Of a stretch of 35,504 nt of DNA, positions 1 through 27,586 are shown piece by piece (position 1 is the first letter of the stretch; each line of letters begins with the position of its first letter). The stretch comes from Macrostomum lignano (taxonomy: Eukaryota). The notes beneath the pieces were generated by a model. The model did no database searches, was not told where the DNA came from, and saw only the letters and a program-made list of their open reading frames with translations. The position numbers and the translations under genes were made by a program. Location: positions 125,564 through 161,067 of the forward strand of contig NIVC01003057.1 of the NCBI GenBank assembly GCA_002269645.1, in the 5' to 3' direction.

Positions 1-230
1 CTCAGAAGAGACTACACTACTTAACTGAAAGTAGTTTAATAGCACATGCACGGACGGAGTTACAGTATTTATGCTTCTCGGGAATCATTTCTACGAGTTT
101 AAAAGTATTATAAGAGATAATACTACTTACTAAAAATAAAAGTAGTTTATTAGCACATGCGCATAGTTTTTTCATTCCTAATAATCGCACAATCGTTTTC
201 TCCCTACCCTCACTGCCTTGTCTGCGCCAG

Positions 231-327
231 CTGGAACGATCCATTGAACCAGTCCGTGACTGAACGAATTGTCAGCCAAATTGTTGCCACAACGCCTGAC
301 ATTCCGTGTCTCCAGACGACTGGCGAA
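231..327 (+). CDS. Constitutive internal exon upstream of the alternative-exon array (uncharacterised, C14orf93-like gene)
   Basis: Acceptor CGCCAG|C at 230 and donor GAA|GTGAGT at 328. Reads WNDPLNQSVTERIVSQIVATTPDIP.... As assembled it ends in phase 0 (..CLQTTGE). One base restored at CC 304-305 gives ..DIPVSPDDWR+A, and one restored at G328 gives ..TTGE+G. Either yields the phase 1 the downstream exons require. Confidence 0.65.
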
Positions 328-406
328 GTGAGTGCAGCTCCATTTTGAATGTGTATAAAAATTAATTGTGTGATTTGTATATATGTAGATATTGAAACAT
401 TGGCGC

Positions 407-425
407 GTAGCATTTGCAGAGGTTT
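407..425 (+). promoter_or_regulatory. Putative intronic docking site GTAGCATTTGCAGAGGTTT
   Basis: About 80 nt after the 328 donor. Reverse-complementary (with G-U pairs) to a motif found once in front of each of the seven alternative exons. Confidence 0.75.
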
Positions 426-615
426 ACAACCCCCAGTTACTGTTTCATTATTATTAATAATAGTATTATTATTACTATCCTCATCCTCAAAATGAGAGCC
501 TGATACTCTCTTGACACACTGATGAACCATTAATTGTATGAATTAATTAACTAATTAAAGCATTAATTGGCCTGTTAACAATGCATAGTGCCGAGCATTA
601 ACAACAATAATAATT

Positions 616-630
616 CCACTGCAAATTCTA
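616..630 (+). promoter_or_regulatory. Selector 1 (CCACTGCAAATTCTA)
   Basis: 13 of 15 positions pair with docking 408-422. Confidence 0.7.
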
Positions 631-662
631 ATGACATTTAAGGTCAGTCAGTCTCTATGCAG

Positions 663-781
663 TTCTAAAGCCTATTCGCATTTTTGCAGCCCAAATGCTC
701 AGACTATGGGAAGAATAGCATCCAAGGCGCGATGTACAGTTGAAAAAGCTTAGAGACAGGAAATATTGTCGAGTGAAAAGA
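663..781 (+). CDS. Alternative exon X1 (5' boundary uncertain; in-frame TAG as assembled)
   Basis: Donor AGA|GTAAGT at 782; ends ..LKKLRDRKYCRVKR. Phase-1 acceptors at 662 or 689. In-frame TAG at 716-718. Confidence 0.55.
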
Positions 782-834
782 GTAAGTTAAGCAGTATGAG
801 GAAATATATATTAATTTAGCCTTAAAAACTACTG

Positions 835-851
835 CCGTGTGCAAATGATAC
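835..851 (+). promoter_or_regulatory. Selector 2 (CCGTGTGCAAATGATAC)
   Basis: TGCAAATG pairs perfectly with docking CATTTGCA, with further flanking pairs on both sides. Confidence 0.55.
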
Positions 852-938
852 TACTGCCCGCGTGAATCTAAAACTCAGCCAAAAACAACATTAATTTATG
901 CTACCTATTAACTCTACACTGAAACACTTGGACTGTAG

Positions 939-1039
939 AACTGTGCAGTCAGTTAATCGGGCAGCTAATGAGCAATCCGTCTGGCAGAAATCTTGATTTG
1001 AAACGTCAGACCATGAGAAAGTGCGGCAGATTGCGCACC
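939..1039 (+). CDS. Alternative exon X2
   Basis: CTGTAG|AA acceptor, ACC|GTAAGA donor, 101 nt = 2+33 codons, open: LCSQLIGQLMSNPSGRNLDLKRQTMRKCGRLRT. Confidence 0.7.
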
Positions 1040-1240
1040 GTAAGACACTTTTGCTACTTACAGGGGTGGGAACTCCGGCCCCCCGGCCCTGTGACACTTA
1101 ACTCTCTTTCTCTCGCCTCTCCACTCTCCTCTCCTATCCCCTTTTCTCCTCTCTCTTATCTCTTGTGTCTCTAGTAAAAACGTTTGCCGACCCCTGTGCC
1201 ACTAGAAGATTCTGTAGCCGTTTGTTATTCCTGCTTTCGC

Positions 1241-1257
1241 AATCCTCTGCGAACTGC
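1241..1257 (+). promoter_or_regulatory. Selector 3 (AATCCTCTGCGAACTGC)
   Basis: CCTCTGCGAA pairs 10/10 (one G-U) with docking TTTGCAGAGG; TGC extends the pairing after a 1-nt bulge. Confidence 0.7.
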
Positions 1258-1347
1258 ATTATCGTTGCGCTAATAAAAAGAATCCGAAGCAATGCTTAGT
1301 AGTATGTGTTGGGCATGGTGATGTCTCTCTATCTGATAAATTTGCAG

Positions 1348-1448
1348 GCAAATGTGCCGTAGCAATATTCACCCCGCTGCATAGGGAGACGGTTGTCAAG
1401 CACGAGGATAGGAAGCGGGTTAAACGAAAATATTCCCGAGTTTCCGCT
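1348..1448 (+). CDS. Alternative exon X3
   Basis: TTTGCAG|GC acceptor, GCT|GTAAGT donor, 101 nt = 2+33 codons, open: KCAVAIFTPLHRETVVKHEDRKRVKRKYSRVSA. Confidence 0.8.
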
Positions 1449-1501
1449 GTAAGTTGACCTTGATTTCTAAGAAATAAGCCAAACCCTCGCCCTCACCGTT
1501 T

Positions 1502-1511
1502 CCTCTGCGAA
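1502..1511 (+). promoter_or_regulatory. Selector 4 (CCTCTGCGAA)
   Basis: 10/10 pairing (one G-U) with docking 413-422. Confidence 0.7.
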
Positions 1512-1584
1512 AGTCGCCGACATTTGTATACAAAATAAATAAAGCACAACTAATTTTGTTTTAAACTGTCAATCCTATCTGTAG

Positions 1585-1695
1585 TTCGATGCAATTTGAA
1601 CATTTTTTGACAATTCCGCGTCAATGAAAAGCGACGCCGTGTTGAAATACGAGGCCAGAAAACGGTCAATGCGTAAATATGCCAGAGTTAGCTCT
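1585..1695 (+). CDS. Alternative exon X4 (one extra T in the 1603-1608 run)
   Basis: CTGTAG|TT acceptor, TCT|GTAAGT donor. Removing one T gives RCNLNIFDNSASMKSDAVLKYEARKRSMRKYARVSS, clearly homologous to X3 at both ends. Confidence 0.7.
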
Positions 1696-1740
1696 GTAAG
1701 TAGTATATGCTTGGGGAAATTGTCCACTAACACTTGAACA

Positions 1741-1754
1741 AGATCTCTGCAAAT
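1741..1754 (+). promoter_or_regulatory. Selector 5 (AGATCTCTGCAAAT)
   Basis: 14/14 pairing (two G-U) with docking 412-425. Confidence 0.75.
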
Positions 1755-1855
1755 TAAACCACAAGTGCCCGTTAACCACCAAAGTTTCACTGTGTACTTT
1801 TTATTGGGTTGGAATGCTTATTTTACTTTAAACACTTGCAATTAATGATGTCTAG

Positions 1856-1950
1856 GCGGTATAGACGAATTTGTGCGCACCGTTTTGGACGAAGAGATGC
1901 GCAATATTAAATCGCGCGGTTATAAACGGCGCTATAGCCGTATTACTGCG
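1856..1950 (+). CDS. Alternative exon X5
   Basis: GTCTAG|GC acceptor, GCG|GTAAGT donor, 95 nt = 2+31 codons, open: GIDEFVRTVLDEEMRNIKSRGYKRRYSRITA. Confidence 0.8.
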
Positions 1951-1971
1951 GTAAGTCTCATTAACCCGGGG

Positions 1972-2400
1972 GTGTGTGTGTGTGTGTGTGTGTCTGCCTG
2001 TCTGTGTATGTGTCTGCCTGTCTGTGTATGTGTCTGTCTGTCTGGCTGTCTGTCTGTCTTAGTGTCTGTCTGTCTATCTGCCTCTGTCTGTCTGTCTGTC
2101 TGTGTAGTGTCTGTCTGTCTGTGTGTCTGTCTGCCTGTCTGTCTGTCTGTGTATGTGTCTGTCTATCTTGTCTGTCTGTGTGTCTGTCTGTCTCTGTGTG
2201 TGTGTCTGTCTGTTTGCCTGTGTGTCTGTCTGTTTGCCTGTCTGTCTGTCTGTCTGTTTGCCTGTCTGCCTGTTTATCTGTCTGTCTGCCTGTCTGTCTG
2301 CCTGTCTATCTGTCTGTCTGTCTGTCTTAGTGCCTGTGTGTCTGTCTGTCTTAGTGTCTGTATGTCTGCCCGCCTGTCTGTTTGCTTGTCTGTCTGTCTA
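1972..2400 (+). repeat. (GT)n plus degenerate (TGTC)n microsatellite in the X5-X6 intron
   Basis: Direct reading. Produces the spurious CLSV-rich ORFs 1974-2410. Confidence 0.95.
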
Positions 2401-2518
2401 TTGGCGTTAACCTATGTATTAAAAATCCAAGCCCTACCTAGGCTGTCTGTATTTAGAGTATATAGAAAACTGGGCAAATTAGAAATTCATTTAGGCCACT
2501 GAGAAGTCCTTTTTTCTC

Positions 2519-2534
2519 AACCTCTGCTAGTCGC
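2519..2534 (+). promoter_or_regulatory. Selector 6 (AACCTCTGCTAGTCGC)
   Basis: AACCTCTGC pairs 9/9 with docking GCAGAGGTT. Confidence 0.7.
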
Positions 2535-2619
2535 TTTCCGTTGTGTATTTAACTTTTATTTGCTGGTTTTGAGTGTTTTTACTTACTATACTCCAATATA
2601 ACTATGCGGTTCTGACTAG

Positions 2620-2729
2620 GACTACTGTACCATATAATGTTTGACGATGGCCGCTACACTGGTAGCGAGGGCGGTTCTTGTACCAAAAATCGACTCAAAT
2701 ATTGGCGTCGTTATAGGCGAATCTCTACA
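2620..2729 (+). CDS. Alternative exon X6
   Basis: GACTAG|GA acceptor, ACA|GTAAGT donor, 110 nt = 2+36 codons, open: LLYHIMFDDGRYTGSEGGSCTKNRLKYWRRYRRIST. Confidence 0.75.
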
Positions 2730-2737
2730 GTAAGTTC

Positions 2738-2745
2738 CCTCTGCA
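2738..2745 (+). promoter_or_regulatory. Selector 7 (CCTCTGCA)
   Basis: 8/8 pairing with docking TGCAGAGG; lies immediately after the X6 donor. Confidence 0.6.
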
Positions 2746-2848
2746 CTTGTCATATCGGCCTAAGCAACAGTTATTATGTTGCTTGCCCTTAGCAACAAAG
2801 ATTTTATATGCTGAGCAATAGTACACAAATACCTTGTATTGCATACAG

Positions 2849-2925
2849 CTTTAATTAAGGAGATATTGTTTACAAAGCAGCGAGCTGATCTGGCCGCCGC
2901 GCGGAAACGCATGCGCGTACGCTGC
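2849..2925 (+). CDS. Alternative exon X7
   Basis: ATACAG|CT acceptor, TGC|GTAAGT donor, 77 nt = 2+25 codons, open: LIKEILFTKQRADLAAARKRMRVRC. Confidence 0.7.
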
Positions 2926-3425
2926 GTAAGTTCAATTGGTCAATCGGCTTTTTTACATTATATATCTACTCAACCCGCTACTGATAGTAATATAATTAAG
3001 TCTGAGCACTTGTTTTAAAGTTTCTTTTTGTCTACAAATTGGAGCTTCATTAGAAACCTGCAAAAAAATCTGAACAATCTGCTTGGACTTTTCTAATTGA
3101 TGTACGTCTAGGTCCCGGGTTCGAATCCGCGTCGCGACTTGCACCTTAGGCCCTGACCACTAATGCATAGTAACTAAAATTTGTGGATATGCTGGGGTGA
3201 AGCGCAATAAATGGAGACTTCTTTCCCAATAGGAGGTTTTTGACAAACTTGACTCCCACTTCTAATTGAATTCCCATTGCTATATAAATTGACAGGGGTG
3301 CGATTCCCCATGAGGGCCAACCCCCACCCCTAAAACAGTGTACATGCCTGATGATTGAAGTGTATGTTCTCAGGATTCATTGCGCACCACCCCCCCCCCC
3401 ATTGCTCGCTCGCCATCCCATGCAG

Positions 3426-3767
3426 AAGCTGTCCCGTCGTCAGAAGGCATTTGAACAAGTCCTGCCATCGCTGAACCCGGACGATCTAGACAAGTATCGA
3501 GTTGTACTATCGCGCGATTTCACTTCGTCAGACGAGGAGACTGAGGACGAATCCACTGGCGAGACGGCCCTGCGAGTTCGAGAACTCGTTTGGGAGTCGG
3601 AGGAGGTCCGCCAGGTGAAGCAGCGGCTAGATCAGACGTTTATGAATCGATTTGCCACGCAGAAGCAGCGAGCCACTCTGCAGCGCTGCATTCGAAACGC
3701 CGGCTGCACGAGTTCGAGGACGCCACCCGCTGAAGCGCCGGACTGGGCTCTGCGAGCTCCCGAGTGA
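3426..3767 (+). CDS. Common terminal exon of the uncharacterised gene (C14orf93-like C-terminal region)
   Basis: ATGCAG|AAG phase-0 acceptor. KLSRRQKAF...DFTSSDEETED...VRELVWES...LD...SSRTPPAEAPDWA then stop. The basic helix / SSDEE acidic patch / W-x-S / LD / SSR-P-P-WA layout recalls C14orf93-like invertebrate proteins (from memory, not searched). Confidence 0.75.
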   Translation, partial: KLSRRQKAFEQVLPSLNPDDLDKYRVVLSRDFTSSDEETEDESTGETALRVRELVWESEEVRQVKQRLDQTFMNRFATQKQRATLQRCIRNAGCTSSRTPPAEAPDWALRAPE

Positions 3768-4038
3768 AAATTGCATTGACTATTTTATTCAAGGGCGACT
3801 TAGCTAGAAGGCAGAGAGCAATATGCTTTGTTTCTTAAAAAAGCTTTGAAGGCTATTTTCTACGCAGAAATCGCTCGATGCAAGCCGGCCTTCAAATATT
3901 TTCTAAGAAAACCCAAAGTTTCCCATCCTCGGACTTCTGTGCTACTGACAGTAGTTTTTTAAGTCAGCTTTTGTCTAAAACGATTTCTTGTATTTAAACT
4001 TGTGGCATCAAATTTGCAATTTGTGTTACACGAAACTT

Positions 4039-4044
4039 AATAAA
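4039..4044 (+). terminator. Candidate polyadenylation signal AATAAA
   Basis: About 270 nt after the TGA at 3767. Confidence 0.4.
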
Positions 4045-4562
4045 TTTGACTGGCAGTTTAAATACCTGGGTGTTGCATTTTGTTGTGTAAGCTGTCGGTG
4101 AACCAGTTACAATTATCTGTAGGATTTCTGCAATCGTTTTTTATGTATATTAACATGTTTTAATTTATAGTAATTCTCGTCTCGCATATATTCTATTCTC
4201 TTGTTTGCACCGATTTTGTTTATAAATAATCAAACAGGTTAACTTTTTACATTTTCTTAACAAGTTGCTACGGCTACAGATTAATGTTAGTGTAATATAT
4301 AAACATGCAGCGCAAAGTGACTTGTCGAAGTTGTCGTTGTCAACATAATCCATACGCTTGTGCATCCTGTTTAATACCTGCCATTATCCAGCTGTACTTC
4401 GTTGAACAAAGCTTGAATACAATACAAGTTTAGTGTTATTCTTAAACAGCAGACCAGAAATTTACTCATGAAGGCACCGTGCTTATTGTCATGCTCGCTA
4501 TTCAATTGTGTCCATTGATGTGTCTTCAGATCTTTAGCTTTTTGTTATTGATGAAAATCGAC

Positions 4563-4845
4563 AGATAGGTAGGTAGATAAATAGGTGTGTAGGTAGGTAG
4601 ATATAGATAAATAGATAGATAGATAGATCGATAGATAGATAGATAGACAGATAGATAGATAGATAGATATAGATGGATGATAGATGGATAGATAGATATA
4701 GATAGATAGAAAGATAGATAGATAGAAAGATATATAGATATATAGATATAGATGGATAGATAGATAGATAGATAGATAGATTGATTGATTGATTGATAGA
4801 TAGATAGATAGATACATTCATAGGTAGATAGATGCGTACGTAGAT
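4563..4845 (+). repeat. (GATA)n microsatellite
   Basis: Degenerate TAGA/GATA run; explains the LSIY ORFs. Confidence 0.95.
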
Positions 4846-5294
4846 AGACTATTTAGAATCTCTATAGTAATAACAGTATCGCAATATTGCAAGGAGTTGG
4901 GCGGATGTGCACTGAAATCTCTTAGCAGCCACTTTGAATATTTGTCCCAGATTCAATAGCCGATTTTTGCAGACAGTACGGGCTCTCAATAGTGAAGAGC
5001 CGAGCCCAGTTCGAGTCGCACGTGCTCTGAAAGTAGAAAATTCTCGAAATTGGGTCAGCGCGTCTGAATTAGTGTGGGGGAGTCAAGATTTGAGACTTCA
5101 AAAGTCAGTCGCAGACATGCAGGTACCCGTATTTTTTAACATTTTTGAAAGAGAGAAGTGAAATATCCACGCTGAGGGAACGCAAGCACGGATATGAATT
5201 CGAGTCGCTATTTTCAAGCATTCAGAATTTAACGTTTTAACTTTATCTATTCAGCAGCAGTTCTTTTGGTTGGAATTGGATAATCAGATCTTTC

Positions 5295-5640
5295 CGAAGC
5301 TTCACAAATCGTCTAGAAGTCTTGCTTGTTGCCTTCACATTCACAAGCTCAAAGCTTCACAAATCGTCTAGAAGTCTTGCTTGTTGCCTTCACATTCACA
5401 AGCTCAAAGCTTCACAAATCGTCTAGAAGTCTTGCTTGTTGCCTTCACATTCACAAATCGTCTAAAAGTCTTGCTTGTTGCCTTCACATTCACAAGCTCG
5501 AAGCTTCACAAATCGTCTAAAAGTCTTGCTTGTTGCCTTCACATTCACAAGCTCAAAGCTTCACAAATCGTCTAAAAGTCTTGCTTGTTGCCTTCACGTT
5601 CACAAGCTCGAAGCTTAATAAATCGTACAGAAGTCTTTTG
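5295..5640 (+). repeat. 55-bp minisatellite (CTTCACAAATCGTCTAGAAGTCTTGCTTGTTGCCTTCACATTCACAAGCTCAAAG), about 6 copies
   Basis: Period seen directly (identical ORF starts at 5326 and 5381); one internally deleted unit. Confidence 0.93.
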
Positions 5641-8184
5641 ATTAGATAAGCTCCATAATTCTGGAGAAGTTTATGCTTGTTGCTTTCACAAGCTCTGCTT
5701 TCAATCCACACTACCAGGTCTTTCTATAATCACTTCACTAGCTGACGACTTAAACCAGTTCGACCAATGTCAATTTTCGAACTATAGGAAAAGCTGTCCT
5801 TGCTATTCTCTGGAATTCCCCTATTGCTTTTAACAGTCGTGACTTTTACGTGTATATCTGCAGTAGGTGCGGGTTGTCTCCATGTCTAGCCTCGGGGTTG
5901 GAATACTATTATTATATTATATCAGCCAAGACGTAATTCTTTGCTGTAGTTTCTCGTGTATTTCAACCGACACAAGAAGCCCATTAAGCTGTTATAGTGG
6001 CTATAAAATTCTCCCACTGAGTGCCTCTACGGACACAGCCATATTACACGTGGAAGTCAAAAGTTAAATTACACCCGATAAATTAAATACGAGTAGATTT
6101 TATTTAATTTTCGCGTATTACCCAACTTCCGTTTTTAGGGAACTCCCGTCAGTCGCTATAGGAGTCCTTTGCGAACGTGCAACAGGCGTATAACACTGTA
6201 GCTACTGTTAATAGGGCCGATAAGTCTTTGTTCTTGTCACGCGCTTGAATTCGGATTCCCCGCTGGTCAGTGGTTCGCTCCGGAGGGTTGGGTTAAAAGT
6301 GTCGTGATGCAATCAGCATTAATTAGAGCTGTGTCCTCCACGCGTGTGTCTGCTTAGGTCCGGAGTTATCGTTATGATAATGGATGGCTGGTTGCAGGTA
6401 TGAAGTTTTAACTGCAGGATTTCCGCTTCTTCTTTTAATTCTTGAGTCATCGCGCGCTGAGTTGTCTCGAAGAACTTGGGAGCTAGTGGCCGCGGCCCGC
6501 ACGCGAGCACATCCGAGTGTTCGGGAACAGAGCTAACAGATGGGATAATTTCATAGCTGGATTGGACTGCAGATTCTGATAGGCAGATACAAGCGGAAGA
6601 TTGAGGAAGCTGAGTCTGGCTTGCCTGCATCATCATCAACCCCGTGCTGTTTCCGCTGACCAGTTCGCTACATTGAACAGTGTCGCCCGTCTGCGCGCCC
6701 CAGAGCACCACTTCTAACACTTAATTATATATCGAACCGCTATATTCTGGCTGCAGTTATGCAATTGGGAGAATGCTCAAAATATGAGGCTGGTGTAAAG
6801 ACTATATAATCTCGTATAGAAAGAAGACCCAAAAGAAATTTGTTGCTTTTTTGAACGCCCGGCTGAGCAGAGAAACCGCGAGTTCCCCGCTGTTTGAGCG
6901 CAGGTGAAACGTAACAACAGACATCCTTTTAGTATCGGCAATAATTCTCTTGAGTCGACACCTAAATCTACAAGCTTCTCCAAGGTCCCGAAGATAAGAG
7001 ATTTCTGCTTTATAGCAGGCAACACAGAATTGCAGTCTGAGATAGATAAAAATGCATATATTTTAAGACAAACTGATAAGAGACTTACAAAACCTAATTT
7101 TGAGCAAACAGATGCTTTGTGTAGACGCGCAAAGAAATAAGATCCAAGATAGATCATAAAATCTGTTATCAAAACGCATGTTAAGTCTCTGACTACAATC
7201 CAGATTCGTCTAGAATATGATTTTGTTCAGTGTCCGACCATCAGTTTTATCCTGTCTGCATGGAACCATGGCGGTTTCCGTGAAATTTGAAGCAACCGCC
7301 ATTCCATGACGGCACGCGCCTCTCGTTTCCTGAGATTTGACCCTTCCCGCCCCTTGCCAGACTTCAGAAGCGGCTACCGCTGTTTGTTAAGGATTCCATG
7401 CCGTGTCTCCGTCCGGTCGCCTCTTGGATTTATAGTGACTCTGCCGTCACTGTGTCCCTACAAAGTTAGCAAACAGTAAGCAGAGATAGGAGGCGCGAGA
7501 AGGGAGTTGAGAACCGGTGTTTGCTCAACCACACGCTCCCTGGATGGACTCATGCCTCATAAGACTGAGCTAGTCTCTAAGCGGAGTCAGCCTCGCTCGT
7601 TCGGTCTCTATGCAACGTCGGCACTTAAACACACAACCGCAGTGAGAAACTTCATCATCAGAGCTGTTTTCCTACTGATTTTCAATATATCCAACAGCCA
7701 TCTGCATGCGCCAGCGTCCTCTGAAGGCATGCGCCTAAACAGAACAACATACATCCGTCATCATTCGTTCGCCCTTGTTTTCATTTCTCAATATTCGAAG
7801 TTTTTCGAGGTCAGATAGATGGGGGGGGGGAAGTAGAGGTGACCCCTGCAGTGATCCAGCTGGACAAACTTTGCGGCCGGGGGTCGGGCGATGCAAAAGT
7901 GTCCGGAAATGAGACGCTTTGAGCTTAGGGAAATATTTTCTTCAGGTGCCCGGTCTGCGGTTACCAAGATATTATTTGTTTATTAGGAATGAAATTCCAC
8001 GATTTCTCTGCGCATGTCTACATTTAAAAAGCGGCGTGATGCCTGAAACTTCAATAGCAATTGACACTTGACATTGTGGACAAAGGAGCCAGATGGTCAA
8101 GGCTGGTAAGGGTGAGAAGGGGGAGAGAGGAGGAATGAGACAGGGGAAGAATCGCAGAGGTGAGTGAAGACTGTGATGTGACTG

Positions 8185-9618
8185 CAGAAGAGATGGGAGA
8201 GGTGAGAGTGAGGGAGAGAAAGTGAGATAGAGGGAAAGTGAATATGAGAGGAATAGAGTTGAGATCGGAGGGAGAGAGTGGAGATGGGAGAGAGGAGATT
8301 GGACGGAGAGTGATGGGAGAGTGGGGATGGGAGAGTGGAGATGGGAGAGTGGGGATAAGAGGGAGAGGAAATGGGAGGGAGAGTGGAGATGGAAGGGAGA
8401 GTGGGGATGGGAGGGAGAGTGGAGATGGGAGAGTGGGGATGGGAGAGTGGGGATGGGAGAGTGGGGATGGGTGAGTGGGGATGGAAGGGAGAGTGGAGAC
8501 GGGAGAGTGGGGATGGGAGGGAGAGTGGAGACGGGAGAGTGGGGATGGGAGAGTGGGATGGGAGAGTGGGATGGGAGAGTGGAGATGGGAGAGTGGGGAT
8601 GGGAGAGTGGAGATGGGAGAGTGGGGATGGGAGAGTGGGGATGGGAGAGTGGAGATGGGAGAGTGGGGATGGGAGAGTGGGGATGGGAGAGTGGAGATGG
8701 GAGAGTGGGGATGGGAGAGTGGGGATGGGAGAGTGGGGATGGGAGAGTGGGGATGGGAGAGTGGGGATGGGAGAGTGGAGATGGGAGAGTGGGGATGGGA
8801 GAGTGGAGATGGGAGAGTGGAGATGGGAGAGTGGGGATGGGAGAGTGGGGATGGGAGAGTGGGGATGGGAGAGTGGGGATGGGAGAGTAGGGATGGGAGA
8901 GTGGAGATCGGAGAGTGGGGATGGGAGAGTGGGGATGGGAGAGTGGGGATGGGAGAGTGGGGATGGGAGAGTGGAGATGGGAGAGTGGAGATGGGAGAGT
9001 GGGGATGGGAGAGTGGGGATGGGAGAGTGGGGATGGGAGAGTGGAGATGGGAGAGTGGGGATGGGAGAGTGGGGATGGATGAGTGGGGATGGAAGGGAGA
9101 GTGGAGACGGGAGAGTGGGGATGGGAGGGAGAGTGGAGACGGGAGAGTGGGGATGGGAGGGAGAGAGGAGATGGGAGGGAGAGTGGGGATGGGAGAGTGG
9201 GGATGGGAGAGTGGAGATGGGAGAGTGGGGATGGGAGAGTGGGGATGGGAGAGTGGGGATGGGAGAGTGGAGATGGGAGAGTGGAGATGGGAGAGTGGGG
9301 ATGGGAGGGAGAGAGGAGATGGGAGGGAGAGTGGGGATGGGAGGGAGAGAGGAGATGGGAGGGAGATGGGAGGGAGAGAGGAGATGGGAGGGAGAGTGGA
9401 GATGGGAGGGAGAGAGGAGATGGGAGGGAGAGTGGAGATGGGAGGGAGAGTGGGGATGGGAGGGAGAGTGGAGATGGGAGGGAGAGTGGGGATGGGAGGG
9501 AGAGTGGGGATGGGAGGGAGAGAGGAGATAGGAGTGAGAGAGTTGAGACGGGAGAGAGGAGATGGGAGGAAGAGAGTTGAGATTGGAAGGAGAGAAGAGA
9601 TGAGAGGAGATGGGAGGC
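8185..9618 (+). repeat. G-rich minisatellite, 14-bp GGGAGAGTGGGGAT with 18-bp GGGAGGGAGAGTGGAGAT variants
   Basis: Direct reading. The overlapping 165-524 aa ORFs in several frames are repeat translations. Confidence 0.95.
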
Positions 9619-10229
9619 AGATCAATGCAGGATTCTGTTACGAGCTATACAACCTCAAACACCGGGAAAACATTCATGCCGGAAATTCTCCATCGCCCAA
9701 CCTGCCGGGGGGGGGGGGGGTTGGGGATGTAGGTATTTGGCTGCGCGCGTGTCTCGCTCGCCTATCTGCGAGTGGAGACTTGAGTCCGGTCGAACTTTCA
9801 TTAGAATTTAATAAGCTTGAGTGTGTTTGGTCACGCCGCCGCCTTTGGTTGCGGTCTCGCTGGCCTAGGTGCGCGTGACTCCTGTTTTGGCAGGTGCGTG
9901 CCTGGGGACTCGCTGTGACTGGCTCTATAATATATGGCTTGAAATGAAATTCAAAATTGGACTGATTGAATCGGTGTTGCTGTCTCGGCGTAGCTGGGGT
10001 TGAGAGTGGTCGCATGCTTTTATTGCTTGAATTTCGGTTGAAGTGGGCTAATCTATGCATATACATAAATATATATGGCATACTTGATTGCGGTTGATAC
10101 ACAACTTTTCGGCAAAAGCTTTCTGGATTCTGTACAAAAAAATAATGGATGTTGTGGAGGTGTTAGGGGCCACTTGCTGTTTCTGAGGCGTCCTTGATGC
10201 CTCTGGTGTCCTTTCACTTGCGTCCATCA

Positions 10230-10632
10230 GTTGTTTTTGGCGCCAATCGGTTGTTTTAGATAATCGGTCAATCGGTCGTTTTTGGCGCCAATCGGTTGTT
10301 TTTGGCGCCAATCGGTTGTTTTAGACAATCGGTCGTTTTTGGCGCCAATCGGTTGTTTTTGGCACCAATCGGTTGTTTTTGGCGCCAATCAGTTGTTTTT
10401 TTACACCAATCGGTTGTTTTAAACAATCGGTTGTTTTTGGCGCCAATCAGTTGTTTCTGGCACCAATCTGTTGTTTTTGGCACCAATAGGTTGCTTTTGG
10501 CGCCAATAGGTTGCTTTTGGCACCAATCGGTTGTTTTTGGCGCCAATAGGTTGTTTTTAGCGTCAATCGGTTGTTTTTTAGCGTCAATCGGTTGTTTTTA
10601 GCGTCAATCAGTTGCTTTTGGCGCCAATTGGT
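10230..10632 (+). repeat. About 20-bp minisatellite with palindromic TTGGCGCCAA core
   Basis: Unit TTGGCGCCAATCGGTTGTTT with variants. Confidence 0.93.
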
Positions 10633-11394
10633 TGTATGAATGGGCACCCCATTCAACTGCATTCGTTGAGAGCGACAAACAGAAAGGCAAAGAAGATTTT
10701 CTTTCAATCAATGCAAATTGGTTGCCACCTTTTCTGTGGCCTCCCAGTTTCAAGAGGGCCGCACGGCACGCCCAGTCTCCCTTAATTGTTGTGGCCCTGG
10801 GAAAAACCAGTTCGTTCACACCCGAGCAGCCGTGGGAGACGGCCATGCTGCGAGTGGATACTCTGACTATGAAGAGAATTAATTGAAAGGGAAATTACAG
10901 TTTAATAAAGGAAGAACCAAAATAGATGGCATTGGGGAGAACAAAGGTTTGGTATGAGACTAGCAAAAGAACCTGTCATCCATTGTGTTGTGTCTTGGTC
11001 AGCATTTCACTATCAATATGCTTTTTTTTGCCTAAGTAGGCACGTGACCCGGGCCTTCCGAATTCAGAAATCTGTGCTCAGTGAGTTTTTTATTTGCGTT
11101 TTTGTTTTATTGTCATCGAATTTATTCGAAAATTAATAGCCGCCGCAGACCCGTAGTTGCAGTTGGCTTGGCAACCTAGAGAATTATGCGAAGATAAAGG
11201 CGAGATATGAACAAGGGGGATGGGGCCATCCGCAGTTTCATTCGATCACGTGACAGCTGGTAATTAAAATATAACAAATCGAGTATAAACTGATTCAAAA
11301 TTTGCAATTATTCAGATGCGAATTTTAGCATTTGAAGGGCCATTTCTCAAGTCAAGTGTGCCATTTCTAATAGTAAAATTTCCATTTCTTAAAT

Positions 11395-11997
11395 TCAAAG
11401 CGCCATTTCTCAGATCCGAAGCGCCATTTCTCAGATCCGAAGCGCCATTTCTCAGATCCGAAGCGCCATTTCTCAGATCCGAAGCGCCATTTCTCAGATC
11501 CGAAGCGCCATTTCTCAGATCCGAAGCGCCATTTCTCAGATCCGAAGCGCCATTTCTCAGATCCGAAGCGCCATTTCTCAGATCCGAAGCGCCATTTCTC
11601 AGATCCGAAGCGCCATTTCTCAGATCAGCGCCATTCTCAGATCCAGCGCCAGTTCTCAGATCCAAACCACCAGTTCTCAGATCCGAAGCGCCATTAATCA
11701 GATCTACAGCGCCATTTCTCAGATCCGAGGCGCCATTTCTTAGATTCTAAGCGCCATTTTTCATACCCAAAGCGCCACTCCTCATACCCAAAGCGCCATT
11801 TCTCAGATCCGAGGCACCATTTCTCAGATCCTTAGCGCCATTTCTCATACCCAAAGCGCCATTTCTCAGATCCAAAGCGCCATTTCTCAGATCCAAACCA
11901 CCATTTCTCAGATCCAAACCACCAGTTCTCAGATCTACAGCGCCATTTCTCAGATCCGAGGCGCCATTTCTCAGATCTACAGCGCCATTTCTCATAT
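11395..11997 (+). repeat. 21-bp minisatellite GCGCCATTTCTCAGATCCGAA
   Basis: About 11 perfect copies followed by diverged copies. Confidence 0.95.
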
Positions 11998-12604
11998 TCG
12001 AGTGCCACTTTGTCCATCGAATGTGCCAAAGCAAATCATTGAGAAACCGGACCCACTGGTTAACAAAGAAATCGTTGACATGAAAAAGTTCGTCAACAGA
12101 AGGCCTCAAGCAGACCGCAGACGATACAAAACGTCTCTAATGTCTTCGATTTTTTATCTAGGAAACAAATTATAGTTCAAAACACTTTTTTTCATATCAG
12201 AGTTTTTCATCCGCCAGATCTCTATGGGTTAAATTTGAGTCAGCATAACGGCAAATTACCCTGCTTCTTCTTCTGATTTCTGAGCTCAGGTCACGCCGCG
12301 TTGCTAGGGCAAGCTTGTCTGCAATAAAACTGACTGAAGGTGTGCCGGCGAGTCGAAAGAGTGTTGGAACTGAGGATGGAGCTAGTTCGGAGTACCAGCA
12401 TCTCTTATCGGGTTTCAGGTGTCTCCAGGATCCCCCCCCCCATTGTCAGGCAGAGTCCTGCGGAGTCCCGATTGCAGGACGAGTAATTGCCGGGACGCAC
12501 GTGTTCCCGAATTGCTGCCTGTTTTCTACAATTTTGCTGAAATTATCAGTTTTCATCAACTAAAGTTGCACGTCCAGGCGAACCCGCATGGCAACAGAGC
12601 TTAG

Positions 12605-13210
12605 GGAAACGGAGAGGAAAGTAGAGGAGCGGAGAGAGAAGTAGAGGGGCAGAGAGAAAGTAGAGGGGCGGATAGGGAAGTAGAGGAGCGGAGAGAGAAG
12701 TAGAGGAGGGGAAAGAAATTAGAGGGGGCGGATAAGGAAGTAGAGAGACGGATAAGCAAGTAGAGAGCGGATAAGGAAGTAGAGGGGCGGATAAGGAAGT
12801 AGAGGGGCGGATAAGGAAGCAGAGGGGCGGATAAGGAAGTAGAGGGGCGGATAAGGAAGTAGAGGGGCGGAAAGAAAAGTAGAGGAGCGGAGAGAGATGG
12901 AGAGAGGCGGATAGGAAAGTAGAGAGCGGATAAGGAAGTAGAGAGACGGATAAGCAAGTAGAGAGCGGATAAGGAAGTAGAGGGGCGGATAAGGAAGTAG
13001 AGGGGCGGATAAGGAAGCAGAGGGGCGGAAAGAAAAGTAGAGGAGCGGAGAGAGATGGAGAGAGGCGGATAGGGAAGTAGAGAGCGGATAAGGAAGTAGA
13101 GAGACGGATAAGGAAGTAGAGGAGCGGGGAGGGAAGTAGAGGAGCGGAGAGAGAAGTAGAGGGGCGGATAAGAAAGTAGAGGGGCGGATAAGAAAGCAGA
13201 AGGGGCGGAG
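12605..13210 (+). repeat. Purine-rich 20-bp minisatellite GATAAGGAAGTAGAGGGGCG
   Basis: Direct reading. Confidence 0.92.
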
Positions 13211-13639
13211 TGGGTGAGCCAGTCGCTCCAAGGCCCCTCTCGTGAGCCCAAGGTGCTGTCCACAATTTCCGAGCGTCTCAGCAGCTGCTCCAGGCCACAT
13301 CCACCAGTTTTTGATGGTGGCCGGTCACGCTCGCTCACCGAACGTTTCCGTCGTGCTCGCATAAAATTTATTGCTTGAATTTTTCTGCTCGATATGAAAG
13401 CGAACTATTGCGCAGCACAATTTAATATTCGCCCAACCAATGCCGTCAGTGGTGGCCCGTTTTCCCATCGTGCGACACCAGAAGGGATCGAGAAGAGCGA
13501 GCACGTTGGCCGCCAAATATCGGTGTGACCGAAAATACTTTCATCTAGTGTTGTTGACTCGTGTTGTTGTGCGCATGTTCCTGCTTTCATTCGTGGTCTG
13601 CCTGATCTTTTATCTACCTCTCCACCTCCTTCTTAATCT

Positions 13640-14196
13640 CTCCCTCTACGAGCTACATCTCTCTCCCTCTACGAGCTACATCTCTCTCCCTCTACGAGCT
13701 ACATCTCTCTCCCTCTACGAGCTACATCTCTCTCCCTCTACGAGCTACATCTCTCTCCCTCTTAATCTCCTTCTTAATCTCTCCCTCTACGAGCTACATC
13801 TCTCTCCCTCTACGAGCTACATCTCTCTCCCTCTACGAGCTACATCTCTCTCCCTCTTAATCTCCTTCTTAATCTCTCCCTCTATGAGCTACATCTCTCT
13901 CCCTCTACGAGCTACATCTCTCTCCCTCTACGAGCTACATCTCTCTCCCTCTACGAGCTACATCTCTCTCCCTCTACGAGCTACATCTCTCTCCCTCTAC
14001 GAGCTACATCTCTCTCCCTCTACGAGCTACATCTCTCTCCCTCTACGAGCTACATCTCTCTCCCTCTACGAGCTACATCTCTCTCCCTCTTAATCTCCTT
14101 CTTAATCTCTCCCTCTCCATCTCTCCCTCCATCTCCCTCTCTCTCTCCCTCTCCATCTCCCTCTCTCTCTCCCTCTCCATCTCCGTCTCTCTCCCC

Positions 14197-14320: not shown

Positions 14321-14989
14321 TTCGGTGCATTTTATTCCATTTGCAATATCTGTACGAAAAAATGCGAGTTCGCTTCAATCCCTCAAACTGGTCGCTACGA
14401 GACAAGACAAAGACTCTCTACACCTGCATTGTTCTCTCGCACAAATACCCTTATATTCGTAGTAAAATACCTTCAGCTCTTAACAGCTTTTAGAGGAAGC
14501 TTGGCCCAGCCTCCGGGGTTATGAAGCAGCTCTCTGTGAGTGTCATTGAGCGGCGCTGGCCAAACAACTTCAAGAGCTGTGCCCGAAAATCACCCCCGAC
14601 CCAAACCCTTAGGGAATAAAGACACGGAGAGGGGAGTCAGAGACAAAGGAAGCTGCTCAGAGGTTTCTATCCTTCCTTCATCCCCCGCCTCAGTTTCATA
14701 AGTCTCCCGAAGCTCCAGTAGACCAGTAGCCCTGGCTGTTTATTCTCCCTCTCTCTCTCTCTCTCGACGCGCCGGTTGCCACCCGCCGAGCCCTCTTATT
14801 TTCCAGAAAAATGCAAGCGGCTATGGTCGAGCGCCAGTAAATGTGGGCGCCCAGACGCAAAAAACCTCTTCAATGGGGTAATTATAAGGGATTTTCAATT
14901 TGGGCTGTTGTTTTTGTCTTGACGATGGCTCTGCTTTTGATTGTGGATTTGCCTGTTCGAGATTGATCATTTGGTTGCTTTGGGGACTC

Positions 14990-15700
14990 TACCATTTCCC
15001 CTCTACTCTCTCCCCTCTACTCTCTCCCCTCTACTCTCTCCCCTCTACTCTCTCCCCTCTACTCTCTCCCCTCTACTCTCTCCCCTCTACTCTCTCCCCT
15101 CTACTCTCTCCCCTCTACTCTTTCCCATCTACTCTCCTATCTACTCTCTCCATCTAATCTCTTCTCTCTACTCTCTCCTCTCTACTCTCCAATCTACTCT
15201 CCTATCTACTCTCTACCCTCTACTCTCTCCCCTGTACTCTCTCCCCTCTCTACTTTCTCCCCTCTCTACTCTATCCCATCTACTCTCTCCCATCTACTCT
15301 CCTATCTACTCTCTCGCATCTACTCTCTCTCATCTACTCTTCTATCTATTCTCTCCCTCTACTCTTCCATCTACTCTCCTATCTACTCTCTACCCTCTAC
15401 TCTCTCCCCTGTACTCTCTCCCCTCTCTACTTTCTCACCTCTACTCTATCCCATCTACTCTCTCCCATCTACTCTCCTATCTACTCTCTGGTATCTACTC
15501 TCTCTCATCTACTTTTCTATCTATTCTCTTCCATCTACTCTCCTATCTACTCTCTCCTCTCTACTCTCTCCCATCTCTACTTTCTCCCCTCTCTACTCTA
15601 TCTCATCTACTCTCGCTTATCTACTCTCTTATCTACTCTCTCGCATCTACTCTCTCCCATCTAATCTCTCCCATCTACTATCTCCCATCTACATCTTCCT
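14990..15700 (+). repeat. Pyrimidine-rich 14-bp minisatellite CTACTCTCTCCCCT
   Basis: Homogeneous at the left end and diverged to the right; flanked by a 35-bp direct repeat. Confidence 0.92.
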
Positions 15701-16169
15701 CTATTGCCTGTTCGAGATTGACCATTTGGTTGCTTTGGTAGAAGGTATTCAGCAATAAAAAGATGAATTCTTGCTTCAATTTATTTCGAGAATATTAGAG
15801 ACTGAACTCATTGAACTCACCAGATGCTGCTTGTACAAAACTCTATGACTCGAACCCCAGCGATTTCAGTTTGCCCTTTGACTCTTAACCCCAGGATATC
15901 ACGACGGTTTCACTGGATAATTCGTTAAACTGTTATTATCTTCCCTATCATGGATAATTTGGGATTTTTGTTCAGTCTGGCAAACAAATTATTGCATGGT
16001 ATGCTTAGCCTACAAGCTTTAGATAATGGAGTTTATCAGCCTGTATATGTGAGAATGAGAACGTTTTAAAACGACTACTATTGCAGAGAGGTTAAATGTC
16101 ATCAGGCGCAGTTGCTTTGATTTTTGATAAGCTGGGTACACAGATGGAGGTGAAGAGATTGAGGTGCAT

Positions 16170-17245
16170 ACAAATTGAGGTTGAAAGGTTGAGGTACACA
16201 GATTGCGGTACATAGATCGAGATACACAGATCGAGATACACAGATCGAGGTACACAGATTGAGGTACACAGATTGAGGTACACAGATTGAGGTACACAGA
16301 TTGAGGTACACAGATCGAGATACACAGATCGAGATACACAGATTGAGGTACACAGATTGAGGTACACAGATTGAGGTACACAGATCGAGATACACAGATC
16401 GAGATACACAGATCGAGATACACAGATCGAGGTACACAGATTGAGGTACACAGATTGAGGTACACAGATTGAGGTACACAGATCGAGATACACAGATCGA
16501 GATACACAGATTGAGGTACACAGATTGAGGTACACAGATTGAGGTACACAGATTGAGGTACACAGATTGAGGTACACAGATCGAGATACACAGATCGAGA
16601 TACACAGATTGAGGTACACAGATTGAGGTACACAGATCGAGATACACAGATCGAGATACACAGATCGAGATACACAGATCGAGATACACAGATCGAGATA
16701 CACAGATCGAGGTACACAGATTGAGGTACACAGATTGAGGTACACAGATTGAGGTACACAGATTGAGGTACACAAATTGAGGTACACAGATCGAGATACA
16801 CAGATCGAGATACACAGATCGAGATACACAGATCGAGATACACAGATCGAGGTACACAGATTGAGGTACACAGATTGAGGTACACAGATTGAGGTACACA
16901 GATTGAGGTACACAGATTGAGGTACACAGATTGAGGTACACAAATTGAGGTACACAGATCGAGATACACAGATCGAGATACACAGATCGAGATACACAGA
17001 TCGAGATACACAGATCGAGGTACACAGATTGAGGTACACAGATTGAGGTACACAGATTGAGGTACACAGATTGAGGTACACAGATTGAGGTACACAGATC
17101 GAGATACACAGATCGAGATACACAGATTGAGGTACACAGATTGAGGTACACAGATTGAGGTACACAGATTGAGGTACACAGATCGAGATACACAGATCGA
17201 GATACACAGATCGAGGTACACAGATTCAGGTACACAGATTGAGGT
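16170..17245 (+). repeat. 14-bp two-variant minisatellite (GATTGAGGTACACA / GATCGAGATACACA)
   Basis: Direct reading. The 371-421 aa minus-strand ORFs are its translations. Confidence 0.95.
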
Positions 17246-17974
17246 ATTTTTCAACAAATGGGCGGAGATGGTCAAAGTCAGCATTTAAAAACCCTGCCAA
17301 GTCTTGAACAGGTCACTTCAAACTGTTTGAGAGGCCGAGAAAGGAGACGGGGAGAGAAAGCCAGTGGCACTTGACCTTATGCCACAAAGCTCTCCATTTC
17401 ACTCTAACAGATGGGTTAATAAAGATATTTTAACAACAACACACAGCTTGGTGAATGACTTGAGAGCACGAGGAGGGAGGGGGTTTTTAATCCGCCGGCC
17501 AGTCATTGCTTTGAAGTTTATTGCGCAAGTGCAACAGTGATCCTAACAGAGTGCGCAATCAGGCTCAAGCCGCCAGTGCACTGTAAACACACCATTAAGG
17601 GTTGAATAATAATGGTAGAGAAGCGGAGACAATGGTCAGTTGCCTCATCCGCAATCGATTGAATTTCTTCTGAGTGACTTTCTGTGTTTTGTTTGCTTTT
17701 TAGGCTAACCCACCACACGTTGAGTGGCCCCTCCGCCCGCCCGCACGCGTTTAAAACTCTACTTAAAAATATTTTAACGGCTGCGGCTGCGGGCGGGTGC
17801 TCAGGGCCACTCAACTCTGCTGGTGGGTCACTTGACTGGCCACCCCAACCTCTGGAGTCCACCTGGCGGCCACTGCTACCCGCTAAACCTCATCCATGGA
17901 GTCCTCGATACAAGAATCTGGACAAATGACTTTGTTATGCCGTTTTTACTAAATTTATCTACACTTATTCAGGA

Positions 17975-27560: not shown

Positions 27561-27586
27561 TTTTTGACCTGGCAAAGAGCACTCAC

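What the first reader, a model, noticed from the sequence alone, without database searches (positions are those of the whole stretch)
663..2925. Hidden array of seven homologous, apparently mutually exclusive exons in an uncharacterised gene
Seen: seven exons (663-781, 939-1039, 1348-1448, 1585-1695, 1856-1950, 2620-2729, 2849-2925) each have a phase-1 AG acceptor and end in a phase-0 GTAAG(T/A) donor. Their ends read RKYCRVKR, RKCGRLRT, RKYSRVSA, RKYARVSS, RRYSRITA, RRYRRIST and RKRMRVRC. Any one of them joins in frame to KLSRRQKAF at 3426; any two together shift the frame. Inference: a tandem-duplicated mutually exclusive exon cluster giving up to seven isoforms. Clusters this large are known mainly from arthropod Dscam1, and I know of none in this protein family. 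The supplied ORF track does not resolve it into a gene.
Basis: partly seen in the sequence, partly recalled or inferred. Interest (0 to 1): 0.93.

Follow-up and report, generated by a model that had tools for sequence, protein, structure and literature searches.

The report
Flatworm seven-exon alternative splicing cluster
An uncharacterised gene of the flatworm Macrostomum lignano carries seven tandem copies of one small coding exon plus intron signals like those that make fly Dscam1 choose one exon per transcript; this would be new for flatworms, but RNA data have not yet shown it.

Summary
The array is real. Seven GTAAG donors lie between 782 and 2926, and each follows an open frame ending [RK][RK]xxR[VLI]xx. 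They are the only GTRAG sites between the upstream exon (231-327) and the last exon (3426-3767).

The window is a Macrostomum lignano locus, 99.5% identical to GenBank NIVC01000420.1 (gene BOX15_Mlig033261g1). The RNA-seq-based GenBank model joins 327 to exon 5 (1856-1950) to 3426. Two UniProt models join 327 to exon 2.

Exon 1 has an in-frame TAG. It is open in only one of three genomic copies. Exon 4 is 111 nt with a TGA in this window, because of a 1-nt insertion absent from all three GenBank copies.

Synonymous sites between the copies are saturated while the peptide motif is kept, so the copies are old and selected as coding sequence. Every double inclusion gives a premature stop.

New here: a single docking site (397-425) is complementary to a selector 56-87 nt upstream of each of exons 2-7, with a weak one for exon 1. 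This is the Dscam1 exon-6 layout. No control sequence matched it.

Four paralogues have one exon at this position and one has two. No transcript evidence exists for exons 1, 3, 4, 6 or 7.

The parts
231..327 (+). Upstream constant exon ('exon B', ...WNDPLNQSVTERIVSQIVATTPDISVSPDDWR), ending in phase 1. The window lacks one T at about 301 relative to GenBank, which shifts the frame.
   Evidence: tblastn of P0001 on L001 and base-by-base comparison of window and L001; frames.
397..425 (+). Candidate docking site (CATTGGCGCG(G)TAGCATTTGCAGAGGTTTAC), about 70 nt downstream of the exon B donor. The window lacks one G at 406 that L001, L002 and L003 all have.
   Evidence: Duplex scan; controls; identical in three genomic copies.
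568..595 (+). Weak candidate selector for exon 1. It ends 67 nt before 663; duplex -21.0 kcal/mol.
   Evidence: alignment to the reverse complement of the docking site.
663..781 (+). Variable exon 1 (119 nt). It is degenerate here, with an in-frame TAG at 716-718. A different TAG is present in copy L002. It is open in copy L003.
833..869 (+). Selector for exon 2 (-24.1 kcal/mol). It pairs with the 5' half of the docking site.
939..1039 (+). Variable exon 2 (101 nt, LCSQLIGQLMSNPSGRNLDLKRQTMRKCGRLRT).
   Evidence: It is joined to exon B in UniProt models P0135 and P0160.
1243..1275 (+). Selector for exon 3 (CCTCTGCGAACTGC...GCGCTAAT; -28.8 kcal/mol).
1348..1448 (+). Variable exon 3 (101 nt, KCAVAIFTPLHRETVVKHEDRKRVKRKYSRVSA).
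   Evidence: The only DNA-level similarity between copies is exon 3 against exon 4.
1497..1528 (+). Selector for exon 4 (CCTCTGCGAAAGTCGCCGAC; -25.1 kcal/mol).
1585..1695 (+). Variable exon 4. It is 111 nt with a TGA in this window because of an extra G at 1598. It is 110 nt and open (RCNLTFFDNSASMKSDAVLKYEARKRSMRKYARVSS) in L001, L002 and L003.
1740..1790 (+). Selector for exon 5 (core AGATCTCTGCAAAT, a 14-bp uninterrupted helix; -28.9 kcal/mol).
1856..1950 (+). Variable exon 5 (95 nt, GIDEFVRTVLDEEMRNIKSRGYKRRYSRITA). This is the exon used in the RNA-seq-based GenBank models.
   Evidence: P0001 and P0134; basis of the annotation in PMC5730564.
2518..2552 (+). Selector for exon 6 (AACCTCTGCTAGTCGC; -25.2 kcal/mol).
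2620..2729 (+). Variable exon 6 (110 nt, LLYHIMFDDGRYTGSEGGSCTKNRLKYWRRYRRIST).
2730..2761 (+). Selector for exon 7 (GTAAGTTCCCTCTGCACTTG...; -25.8 kcal/mol). It overlaps the exon 6 donor.
2849..2925 (+). Variable exon 7 (77 nt, LIKEILFTKQRADLAAARKRMRVRC).
3426..3767 (+). Constant last coding exon (KLSRRQKAF...DWALRAPE plus stop). This is the conserved C-terminal domain of the family.

Best explanation
Window 231-3767 is the 3' half of a Macrostomum lignano gene (GenBank BOX15_Mlig033261g1). It belongs to an uncharacterised metazoan protein family that is expanded in this flatworm.

One small exon has been duplicated in tandem to seven copies. This exon encodes most of a long helix that ends in a basic R-K-Y-x-R-V motif, just before the conserved C-terminal domain.

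Proposed mechanism:
- One copy is spliced into each productive mRNA. That gives six alternative proteins from this locus. Exon 1 is now a stop-containing pseudo- or poison exon here.
- Choice is governed by competing RNA pairings. A single docking site about 70 nt after the upstream exon can pair with only one of the selectors that lie about 56-87 nt upstream of each variable exon. Pairing loops out the preceding copies and brings the chosen acceptor close to the upstream donor. This is the arrangement described for Dscam1 exon 6.
- Transcripts with two copies, or with none, are out of frame. Double inclusions carry NMD-type premature stops.

Shown: the array, its homology, the shared splice phases, the coding-type conservation, use of exon 5 (and probably exon 2) alone, and the complementarity.

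Inferred: use of exons 3, 4, 6 and 7, true mutual exclusivity, and the role of the RNA pairing.
For: - **Array.** Seven motif-plus-GTAAG donors are the only GTRAG sites in the 3.1 kb interval.
- **Identity.** The profile search finds P0001, PAA83431.1 (E 1.5e-81). The locus matches NIVC01000420.1 at 99.5%. P0001 maps as exon B, exon 5 and the last exon. That annotation is RNA-seq based.
- **Exon 2.** P0135 and P0160 join exon B to exon 2 at the predicted acceptor.
- **Integrity.** Exons 2-7 are open, 3n+2 and keep their splice sites in three genomic copies. Exon 1 is open in one copy.
- **Coding selection.** Across the last 8 codons of 21 exon pairs there are 24 identical codons, 53 synonymous differences and 91 amino-acid differences. 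Identity by codon position is 0.42, 0.65 and 0.32, against 0.25-0.29 in the flanking intron.
- **Single ancestral exon.** Paralogues have the same phases and usually one exon at this position.
- **Frame.** Each of exons 2-7 alone gives the full ORF. All 21 double inclusions give a stop more than 50 nt before the last junction.
- **Docking and selectors.** One 24-mer pairs with all six inter-exon introns at -24.3 to -28.7 kcal/mol. The selectors end 56-87 nt before exons 2-7. Besides GTAAGT, CTCTGC is the only hexamer shared by at least 5 of 6 introns, and it is the reverse complement of the docking core.
- **Controls.** None of 10,000 GC-matched genomic 24-mers reaches the observed 5th-ranked, 6th-ranked or summed energies. 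With 40 dinucleotide shuffles and a full rescan, the best 6th-ranked energy was -15.8 +/- 1.1 against the observed -24.3.
Against: - No transcript or protein in the searchable collections contains exons 1, 3, 4, 6 or 7. That search is not exhaustive, since it also missed P0001.
- The two exon-2 models read through the exon 2 donor and may be ab initio predictions.
- The selectors descend from one ancestral sequence, so the six matches to the docking site are not independent events. Uninterrupted helices are only 8-14 bp.
- The three genomic copies are too similar (about 1% substitutions in alignable intron) to test conservation of the elements.
- No orthologue from another species was available.
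- No element was found that would explain skipping of the copies downstream of the chosen one.
- Exon 1 is decaying in two of three copies, so at least part of the array is dispensable.
Confidence: 0.72

Rival explanations
1. Only exon 5 is a real, constitutive exon. The other six are relics of old tandem duplications that are never, or only accidentally, spliced. The complementarity between the intron elements is an inherited leftover of a stem-loop that was partly duplicated, with no present function.
For: The RNA-seq-based GenBank models at two loci use only exon 5. Exon 1 has acquired independent nonsense mutations in two of three copies. No public protein contains exons 3, 4, 6 or 7. Partial duplication of a stem-loop is a published route to such complementarity (PMC6071210).
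Against: Six copies keep an open frame, identical phase, AG acceptor and GTAAG donor although their synonymous sites and flanking introns have diverged to random levels. Relics that old should be riddled with stops and lost splice sites. The selectors are the only conserved intron motif. Two independent models join exon B to exon 2.
Confidence: 0.15
2. The exons are real alternatives, but choice does not depend on RNA pairing. Exon selection is set by splice-site strength and protein factors. The shared CCTCTGC motif would be a protein-binding intronic element, and frame incompatibility plus NMD removes multi-exon products.
For: All double inclusions are NMD-type. The core motif is pyrimidine-rich and sits at a fixed distance upstream of each acceptor. 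Helices are interrupted and modest in length.
Against: The selectors for exons 1 and 2, and part of the selector for exon 3, pair with the other half of the docking site (GGCGCGGTAGCATTTGC) without the CCTCTGC core. This fits pairing to one docking site better than one protein motif. None of 10,000 real genomic 24-mers matches the six real introns as well.
Confidence: 0.1
3. Alternative first exons with their own promoters (as in clustered protocadherins or UGT1A), or parts of separate paralogous genes.
For: Each unit ends in a strong donor that could splice to the common exon at 3426.
Against: Exons 1 and 3 have no in-frame ATG. All have AG acceptors in the phase left by exon B. Annotated models join exon B to exon 5 and to exon 2. 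No other part of the protein is duplicated in the interval.
Confidence: 0.02

Closest known systems
Drosophila Dscam1 exon 6 cluster (docking site and selector sequences; Graveley 2005, as summarised in PMC6071210)
   Same: Tandem homologous exons sit in one intron. A single docking site lies in the intron just downstream of the upstream constant exon. One selector lies upstream of each variable exon, and all selectors compete for overlapping parts of the docking site. One exon is included per mRNA.
   Different: There are 7 copies rather than 48. The exon encodes a helix with a basic tail in an uncharacterised protein, not an Ig half-domain. The organism is a flatworm, not an arthropod, so the origin must be independent. 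Here the structure is only predicted. No repressor or other means of skipping downstream copies has been identified.
Insect 14-3-3zeta, Mhc and MRP1 mutually exclusive clusters (PMC6071210)
   Same: These are multi-exon clusters in non-Dscam genes controlled by competing intronic pairings. Cluster sizes are comparable (a few to about eight exons; this size range is from my own knowledge).
   Different: In those genes the docking site lies downstream of the cluster. Here it is upstream, and no downstream docking site was found.
coq-2 mutually exclusive exon pair in helminths (PMC7434440)
   Same: It shows that mutually exclusive splicing of duplicated exons occurs in flatworm lineages.
   Different: It is a pair, not a seven-member array. 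I have not checked that paper for a docking and selector mechanism.
Clustered protocadherins and UGT1A variable first exons
   Same: An array of homologous variable exons, each with a donor that splices to a common downstream exon.
   Different: Those are first exons with their own promoters and start codons. Here the exons are internal, have acceptors, and two lack any ATG.
Paralogues of the same family in M. lignano (PAA93606.1, PAA67809.1, PAA93853.1, PAA90217.1, PAA53999.1)
   Same: Same exon-intron structure and phases, and the same protein architecture. PAA53999.1 (P0004) has a second, unannotated homologous exon.
   Different: They carry one copy of the exon (two in PAA53999.1) rather than seven.

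Membership tests
Tandem-duplicated mutually exclusive exon cluster | Adjacent exons in one intron that are homologous to each other | tested here: met
   All seven share the C-terminal motif and align to the single exon of paralogues. Exons 3 and 4 also align at DNA level.
Tandem-duplicated mutually exclusive exon cluster | Same splice phases and similar length, with open reading frames | tested here: met
   Lengths are 77-119 nt, all 3n+2, with a phase-1 acceptor and phase-0 donor in the GenBank copies. In this window exon 4 fails through a 1-nt insertion and exon 1 has a TAG.
Tandem-duplicated mutually exclusive exon cluster | Exactly one of the exons is present in each mature transcript | tested here: inconclusive
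   The annotated models contain exon 5 alone or join exon B to exon 2. There are no data for the other exons, and no read-level data were available.
Tandem-duplicated mutually exclusive exon cluster | Joint inclusion is incompatible with a productive mRNA | tested here: met
   All 21 pairs give a premature stop more than 50 nt upstream of the last junction. Skipping all copies shifts the frame.
Docking-site and selector competing RNA structures (Dscam1 exon 6 type) | One docking site in the intron flanking the cluster | tested here: met
   Window 397-425. It is the best-scoring window of both flanking introns and exceeds all controls.
Docking-site and selector competing RNA structures (Dscam1 exon 6 type) | One selector next to each variable exon, all overlapping on the docking site so that only one can pair | tested here: met
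   Six selectors end 56-87 nt upstream of exons 2-7 at -24 to -29 kcal/mol. There is a weak one for exon 1 at -21. All pair within 393-428.
Docking-site and selector competing RNA structures (Dscam1 exon 6 type) | Conservation of docking site and selectors across species | tested here: inconclusive
   They are identical in three genomic copies of M. lignano, but these copies are nearly identical overall. No orthologous locus from another species could be fetched.
Docking-site and selector competing RNA structures (Dscam1 exon 6 type) | Disruptive and compensatory mutations change and restore exon choice | not testable with these tools
   This needs minigene or transgenic experiments.
Variable first-exon arrays (protocadherin or UGT1A type) | Each variable exon has its own promoter and start codon | tested here: not met
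   There is no in-frame ATG in exons 1 and 3. The exons have acceptors that are used after exon B in annotated models.
Any curated protein family (Pfam, PDB) | Significant match of the protein to a described domain or solved structure | tested here: not met
   No Pfam hit above threshold. No PDB sequence hit. No Foldseek PDB hit with E <= 0.001.

The most novel reading that the evidence does not exclude
A flatworm gene has independently evolved a Dscam1-exon-6-type system. A seven-member (six productive) mutually exclusive exon cluster would be chosen by competition of upstream selectors for one docking site. As far as the searchable literature shows, it would be the first such multi-exon competing-structure cluster outside arthropods. 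It sits in a lineage-expanded protein family where the swapped module is a helix next to a basic patch.
Probability: 0.5. Interest if true: 0.75.

Novelty: new member of a known kind. Interest (0 to 1): 0.62.

Why it matters
Multi-exon mutually exclusive clusters controlled by docking-site and selector pairing have been worked out almost only in insects (PMC6071210). An independent case in a lophotrochozoan would show that tandem exon duplication repeatedly produces this RNA-based choice mechanism, as Ivanov and Pervouchine proposed.

The case is small (seven exons, 3 kb) and experimentally tractable. M. lignano has transgenesis and public RNA-seq (PMC5730564).

It also flags an annotation gap. 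The current gene models show one isoform where six may exist. One paralogue has a second unannotated copy of the same exon.

Tried and rejected
- **Word-indexed protein searches.** A search with the last exon found nothing. A search with the concatenated variable exons found only the exon-2 model. The index is evidently incomplete, because the exhaustive HMMER search found 132 relatives.
- **Function of the protein.** Pfam, PDB sequences and Foldseek against PDB with the AlphaFold model gave no assignment.
- **RNA genes.** Rfam and tRNA scans of the window found nothing.
- **Downstream docking site.** A scan of the last intron (bidirectional model) gave nothing above background.
- **Shorter exon 1.** The only in-phase AG after the stop would give a 26-nt exon with a poor acceptor, so I rejected it (read from the sequence).
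- **Alternative first exons or separate genes.** Rejected.
- **Arrays in relatives.** Four M. lignano paralogues and two family genes on an ENA metagenome contig have a single exon. One paralogue has two.
- **Docking site in the two-exon paralogue.** A quick scan found nothing convincing.
- **Literature.** Searches for Macrostomum or flatworm mutually exclusive clusters, and for the gene identifiers, found nothing.
Full report
**1. The observation**

Seven GTAAG sites lie at 782, 1040, 1449, 1696, 1951, 2730 and 2926. That is 7 of the 16 on the + strand of the whole window.

They are the only GT[AG]AG sites between 328 and 3425. A motif-plus-GT regex finds nothing comparable elsewhere in the window except three hits inside a minisatellite. 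Every stated acceptor has an AG. So the array is real and far beyond chance.

- Exon 1 (663-781) has an in-frame TAG at 716-718.
- Exon 4 (1585-1695) is 111 nt (3n) and has an in-frame TGA.

The upstream exon 231-327 is also open only in a frame that ends in phase 0, which does not fit the phase-1 acceptors.

**2. What the locus is**

A word-indexed protein search with the last exon found nothing. An exhaustive HMMER profile search found 132 relatives. The best is P0001, which is PAA83431.1, 'hypothetical protein BOX15_Mlig033261g1' of the flatworm Macrostomum lignano (E 1.5e-81).

Its contig, NIVC01000420.1 (locus L001), matches window 1-13762 at 99.5%. Nearly all differences are 1-nt indels. 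P0001 maps as a first exon upstream of the window, then exon B (window 231-327), then exon 5 (1856-1950), then the last exon (3426-3767). The GenBank annotation of this assembly was built from RNA-seq and a de novo transcriptome (PMC5730564). The path from exon B through exon 5 to the last exon therefore has RNA support.

Three of the indels matter:
- GenBank has an extra T at window 301. This makes exon B read ...TTPDISVSPDDWR and end in phase 1.
- GenBank lacks the G at window 1598. Exon 4 is then 110 nt and open (RCNLTFFDNS...).
- GenBank has an extra G at window 406.

Two further genomic copies exist, as expected for the partly duplicated DV1 genome. They are L002 (NIVC01001317.1) and L003 (NIVC01002369.1).
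- In all three GenBank copies, exons 2-7 are open, 3n+2, and keep their AG acceptors and GTAAG donors.
- Exon 1 carries a TAG in L001 and the window, and a different TAG in L002. It is open in L003 (LKSIRIFAAQMLRLWEEMHPRRDVQLKKLRDRKYCRVKR).
- Exon 1 was therefore once intact and is now decaying.

Other models of the same gene give further hints:
- P0135 and P0160 (UniProt A0A1I8HGZ8 and A0A1I8HZA2) join exon B directly to exon 2 at the predicted acceptor, then read through its donor.
- P0133 retains the intron after exon B.

**3. Are the copies functional coding exons?**

At DNA level only exons 3 and 4 still align (66% over 77 nt). Flanking intron identity is at random level, 0.25-0.29.

In the last eight codons, the 21 exon pairs show 24 identical codons, 53 synonymous differences and 91 amino-acid differences. 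Identity is 0.42, 0.65 and 0.32 at codon positions 1, 2 and 3. Arginine is written as AGG, AGA, CGA, CGT, CGG and CGC at the same motif positions.

This pattern means old duplicates maintained by selection on the peptide. It does not fit recent copies or decayed relics.

**4. Relation to the family**

The protein has no Pfam domain, no PDB relative and no Foldseek match. Relatives are many M. lignano paralogues plus 'uncharacterized proteins' of Lingula, Glandiceps and Potamilus.

An AlphaFold model built on 19 sequences is confident for the C-terminal half (pLDDT 80-98). It places the variable exon (residues 284-315) inside one long helix, 279-330, that runs into the basic KLSRRQK stretch.

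Paralogues P0002, P0003, P0005 and P0007 have the same exon structure and phases, with a single exon at this position. P0004 has two: the annotated one and an unannotated one at L008 4840-4916. Two family genes on an ENA metagenome contig also have one each. The seven-fold array is therefore specific to this gene, and each family protein contains one copy of the segment.

**5. Exclusivity by frame**

This was computed on the GenBank sequence.
- Each of exons 2-7 alone gives the full ORF.
- Exon 1 alone gives a premature stop.
- Skipping all copies shifts the frame and stops 29 nt into the last exon.
- All 21 double inclusions stop more than 50 nt before the last junction, which is the NMD-type position.

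**6. A docking-site and selector arrangement (new)**

I scanned 24-mers of both flanking introns against the inter-exon introns with RNAduplex. One site stood out, at window 397-425 (CAUUGGCGCG(G)UAGCAUUUGCAGAGGUUUAC), about 70 nt after the exon B donor. It pairs with all six inter-exon introns at -24.3 to -28.7 kcal/mol.

The partners lie at:

| Selector for | Window coordinates |
|---|---|
| exon 2 | 833-869 |
| exon 3 | 1243-1275 |
| exon 4 | 1497-1528 |
| exon 5 | 1740-1790 |
| exon 6 | 2518-2552 |
| exon 7 | 2730-2761 |

Each ends 56-87 nt before the next variable exon. A weaker partner (-21.0) at 568-595 ends 67 nt before exon 1. The last intron has none.

Besides the donor hexamer, CTCTGC is the only hexamer shared by at least 5 of the 6 introns. 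It is the reverse complement of GCAGAG, which occurs once in the docking intron. The selectors for exons 1, 2 and partly 3 pair with the other half of the docking site. This argues for pairing rather than a common protein-binding motif.

Controls:
- None of 10,000 GC-matched genomic 24-mers reaches the observed 5th-ranked, 6th-ranked or summed energies against the real introns.
- With dinucleotide-shuffled introns and a full rescan of both flanking introns, the best 6th-ranked energy is -15.8 +/- 1.1 (minimum -18.8) against the observed -24.3. The summed energy is -120 +/- 6 against -157.

Caveats:
- The selectors share ancestry, so they are not independent.
- Uninterrupted helices are only 8-14 bp.
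- The three genomic copies are too alike to test conservation.

The geometry, with the docking site downstream of the upstream constant exon and selectors upstream of each variant, is that of Dscam1 exon 6. It is not that of 14-3-3zeta, Mhc or MRP1, where the docking site is downstream (PMC6071210).

**7. Verdict**

- Its reading as a tandem-duplicated, mutually exclusive cluster is the best explanation. It gains independent support from the annotated exon-5-only transcripts, the exon-2 models, the coding-type conservation, the frame logic and the competing-structure signature.
- It is not proven. There are no data for exons 1, 3, 4, 6 and 7.
- Exon 1 is defective at this locus. In this window's sequence exon 4 and exon B carry 1-nt indels, probably assembly errors.
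- I found no report of such a cluster in flatworms or of this gene. A mutually exclusive pair (coq-2) is known in helminths (PMC7434440).
- I file it as a new member of a known kind, of moderate to high interest. It can be tested directly with existing RNA-seq.

Noticed in passing
window 301, 406, 1598 (and about 30 other sites up to 13762): The window differs from GenBank NIVC01000420.1 almost only by 1-nt indels, often in short homopolymers. Three of them hit functional elements of this gene: the exon B frame, the docking site and the exon 4 frame. They look like assembly errors rather than alleles.
   Followed up: partly
L008 (NIVC01002989.1) 4840-4916: The paralogue PAA53999.1 (BOX15_Mlig000065g7) has a second, unannotated copy of the same exon (ELRKCVFTTLLNWRKDSRKYLRRNS|gtaaga, 77 nt, same phases). 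It lies 1.6 kb downstream of the annotated one (3175-3260). This is a candidate mutually exclusive pair. No clear docking site was found in a quick scan.
   Followed up: partly
L002 (NIVC01001317.1) 7627-11297, corresponding to window about 660: One genomic copy of the gene has a 3.67 kb insertion immediately upstream of the exon 1 acceptor. Exon 1 also carries a nonsense mutation in that copy. The content of the insertion was not examined.
   Followed up: no
window 23881-31576, minus strand: A PLK4 (polo-like kinase 4) gene. Kinase-domain pieces lie at 31070-31576 and 27245-27943, and Plk4 polo boxes PB1 and PB2 at 25150-26061 (Pfam).
   Followed up: partly
window 8051-9878, 10296-10601, 11312-12109, 12546-14093, 14941-15741, 16019-17284, 18272-18781, 19692-20556, 22943-23539, 33304-34498: Dense minisatellite arrays produce long spurious ORFs in several frames on both strands. 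This is consistent with the high tandem-repeat content reported for this genome (PMC5730564).
   Followed up: no
window 1972-2400 and 4560-4840: A (TCTG)n-type microsatellite fills most of the intron between exons 5 and 6. A (GATA)n microsatellite lies downstream of the gene. The first pairs promiscuously in duplex scans and had to be excluded to see selector 6.
   Followed up: yes
window 3100-3135: A tRNA-like segment (ggtcccgggttcgaatccgcgtcgcgac, resembling a T-arm) lies in the last intron, probably a SINE fragment. ARAGORN and Rfam call nothing there.
   Followed up: partly
window 23-49 and 134-160: A 27-nt direct repeat (89% identity) lies in the intron upstream of exon B.
   Followed up: no
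L007 (ENA ERZ25070786 ctg116691l) 3721-6474 and 6777-8381: A metagenome-assembly contig from an unidentified organism carries two tandem genes of the same family. Reverse-transcriptase and integrase ORFs lie nearby: the RT ORF (4412-4591) inside the intron before the last exon of the first gene, the integrase ORF (1598-2722) upstream of its variable exon. Each gene has one exon at the variable position.
   Followed up: partly
protein clusters: UniProt names of M. lignano members of this family ('BEN domain-containing', 'CUT domain-containing', 'Rab-GAP TBC domain-containing' and others) differ from member to member. Pfam scans of five representative proteins (none of them the so-named entries) do not support them. 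They probably come from fused or mis-predicted models of the older assembly.
   Followed up: no
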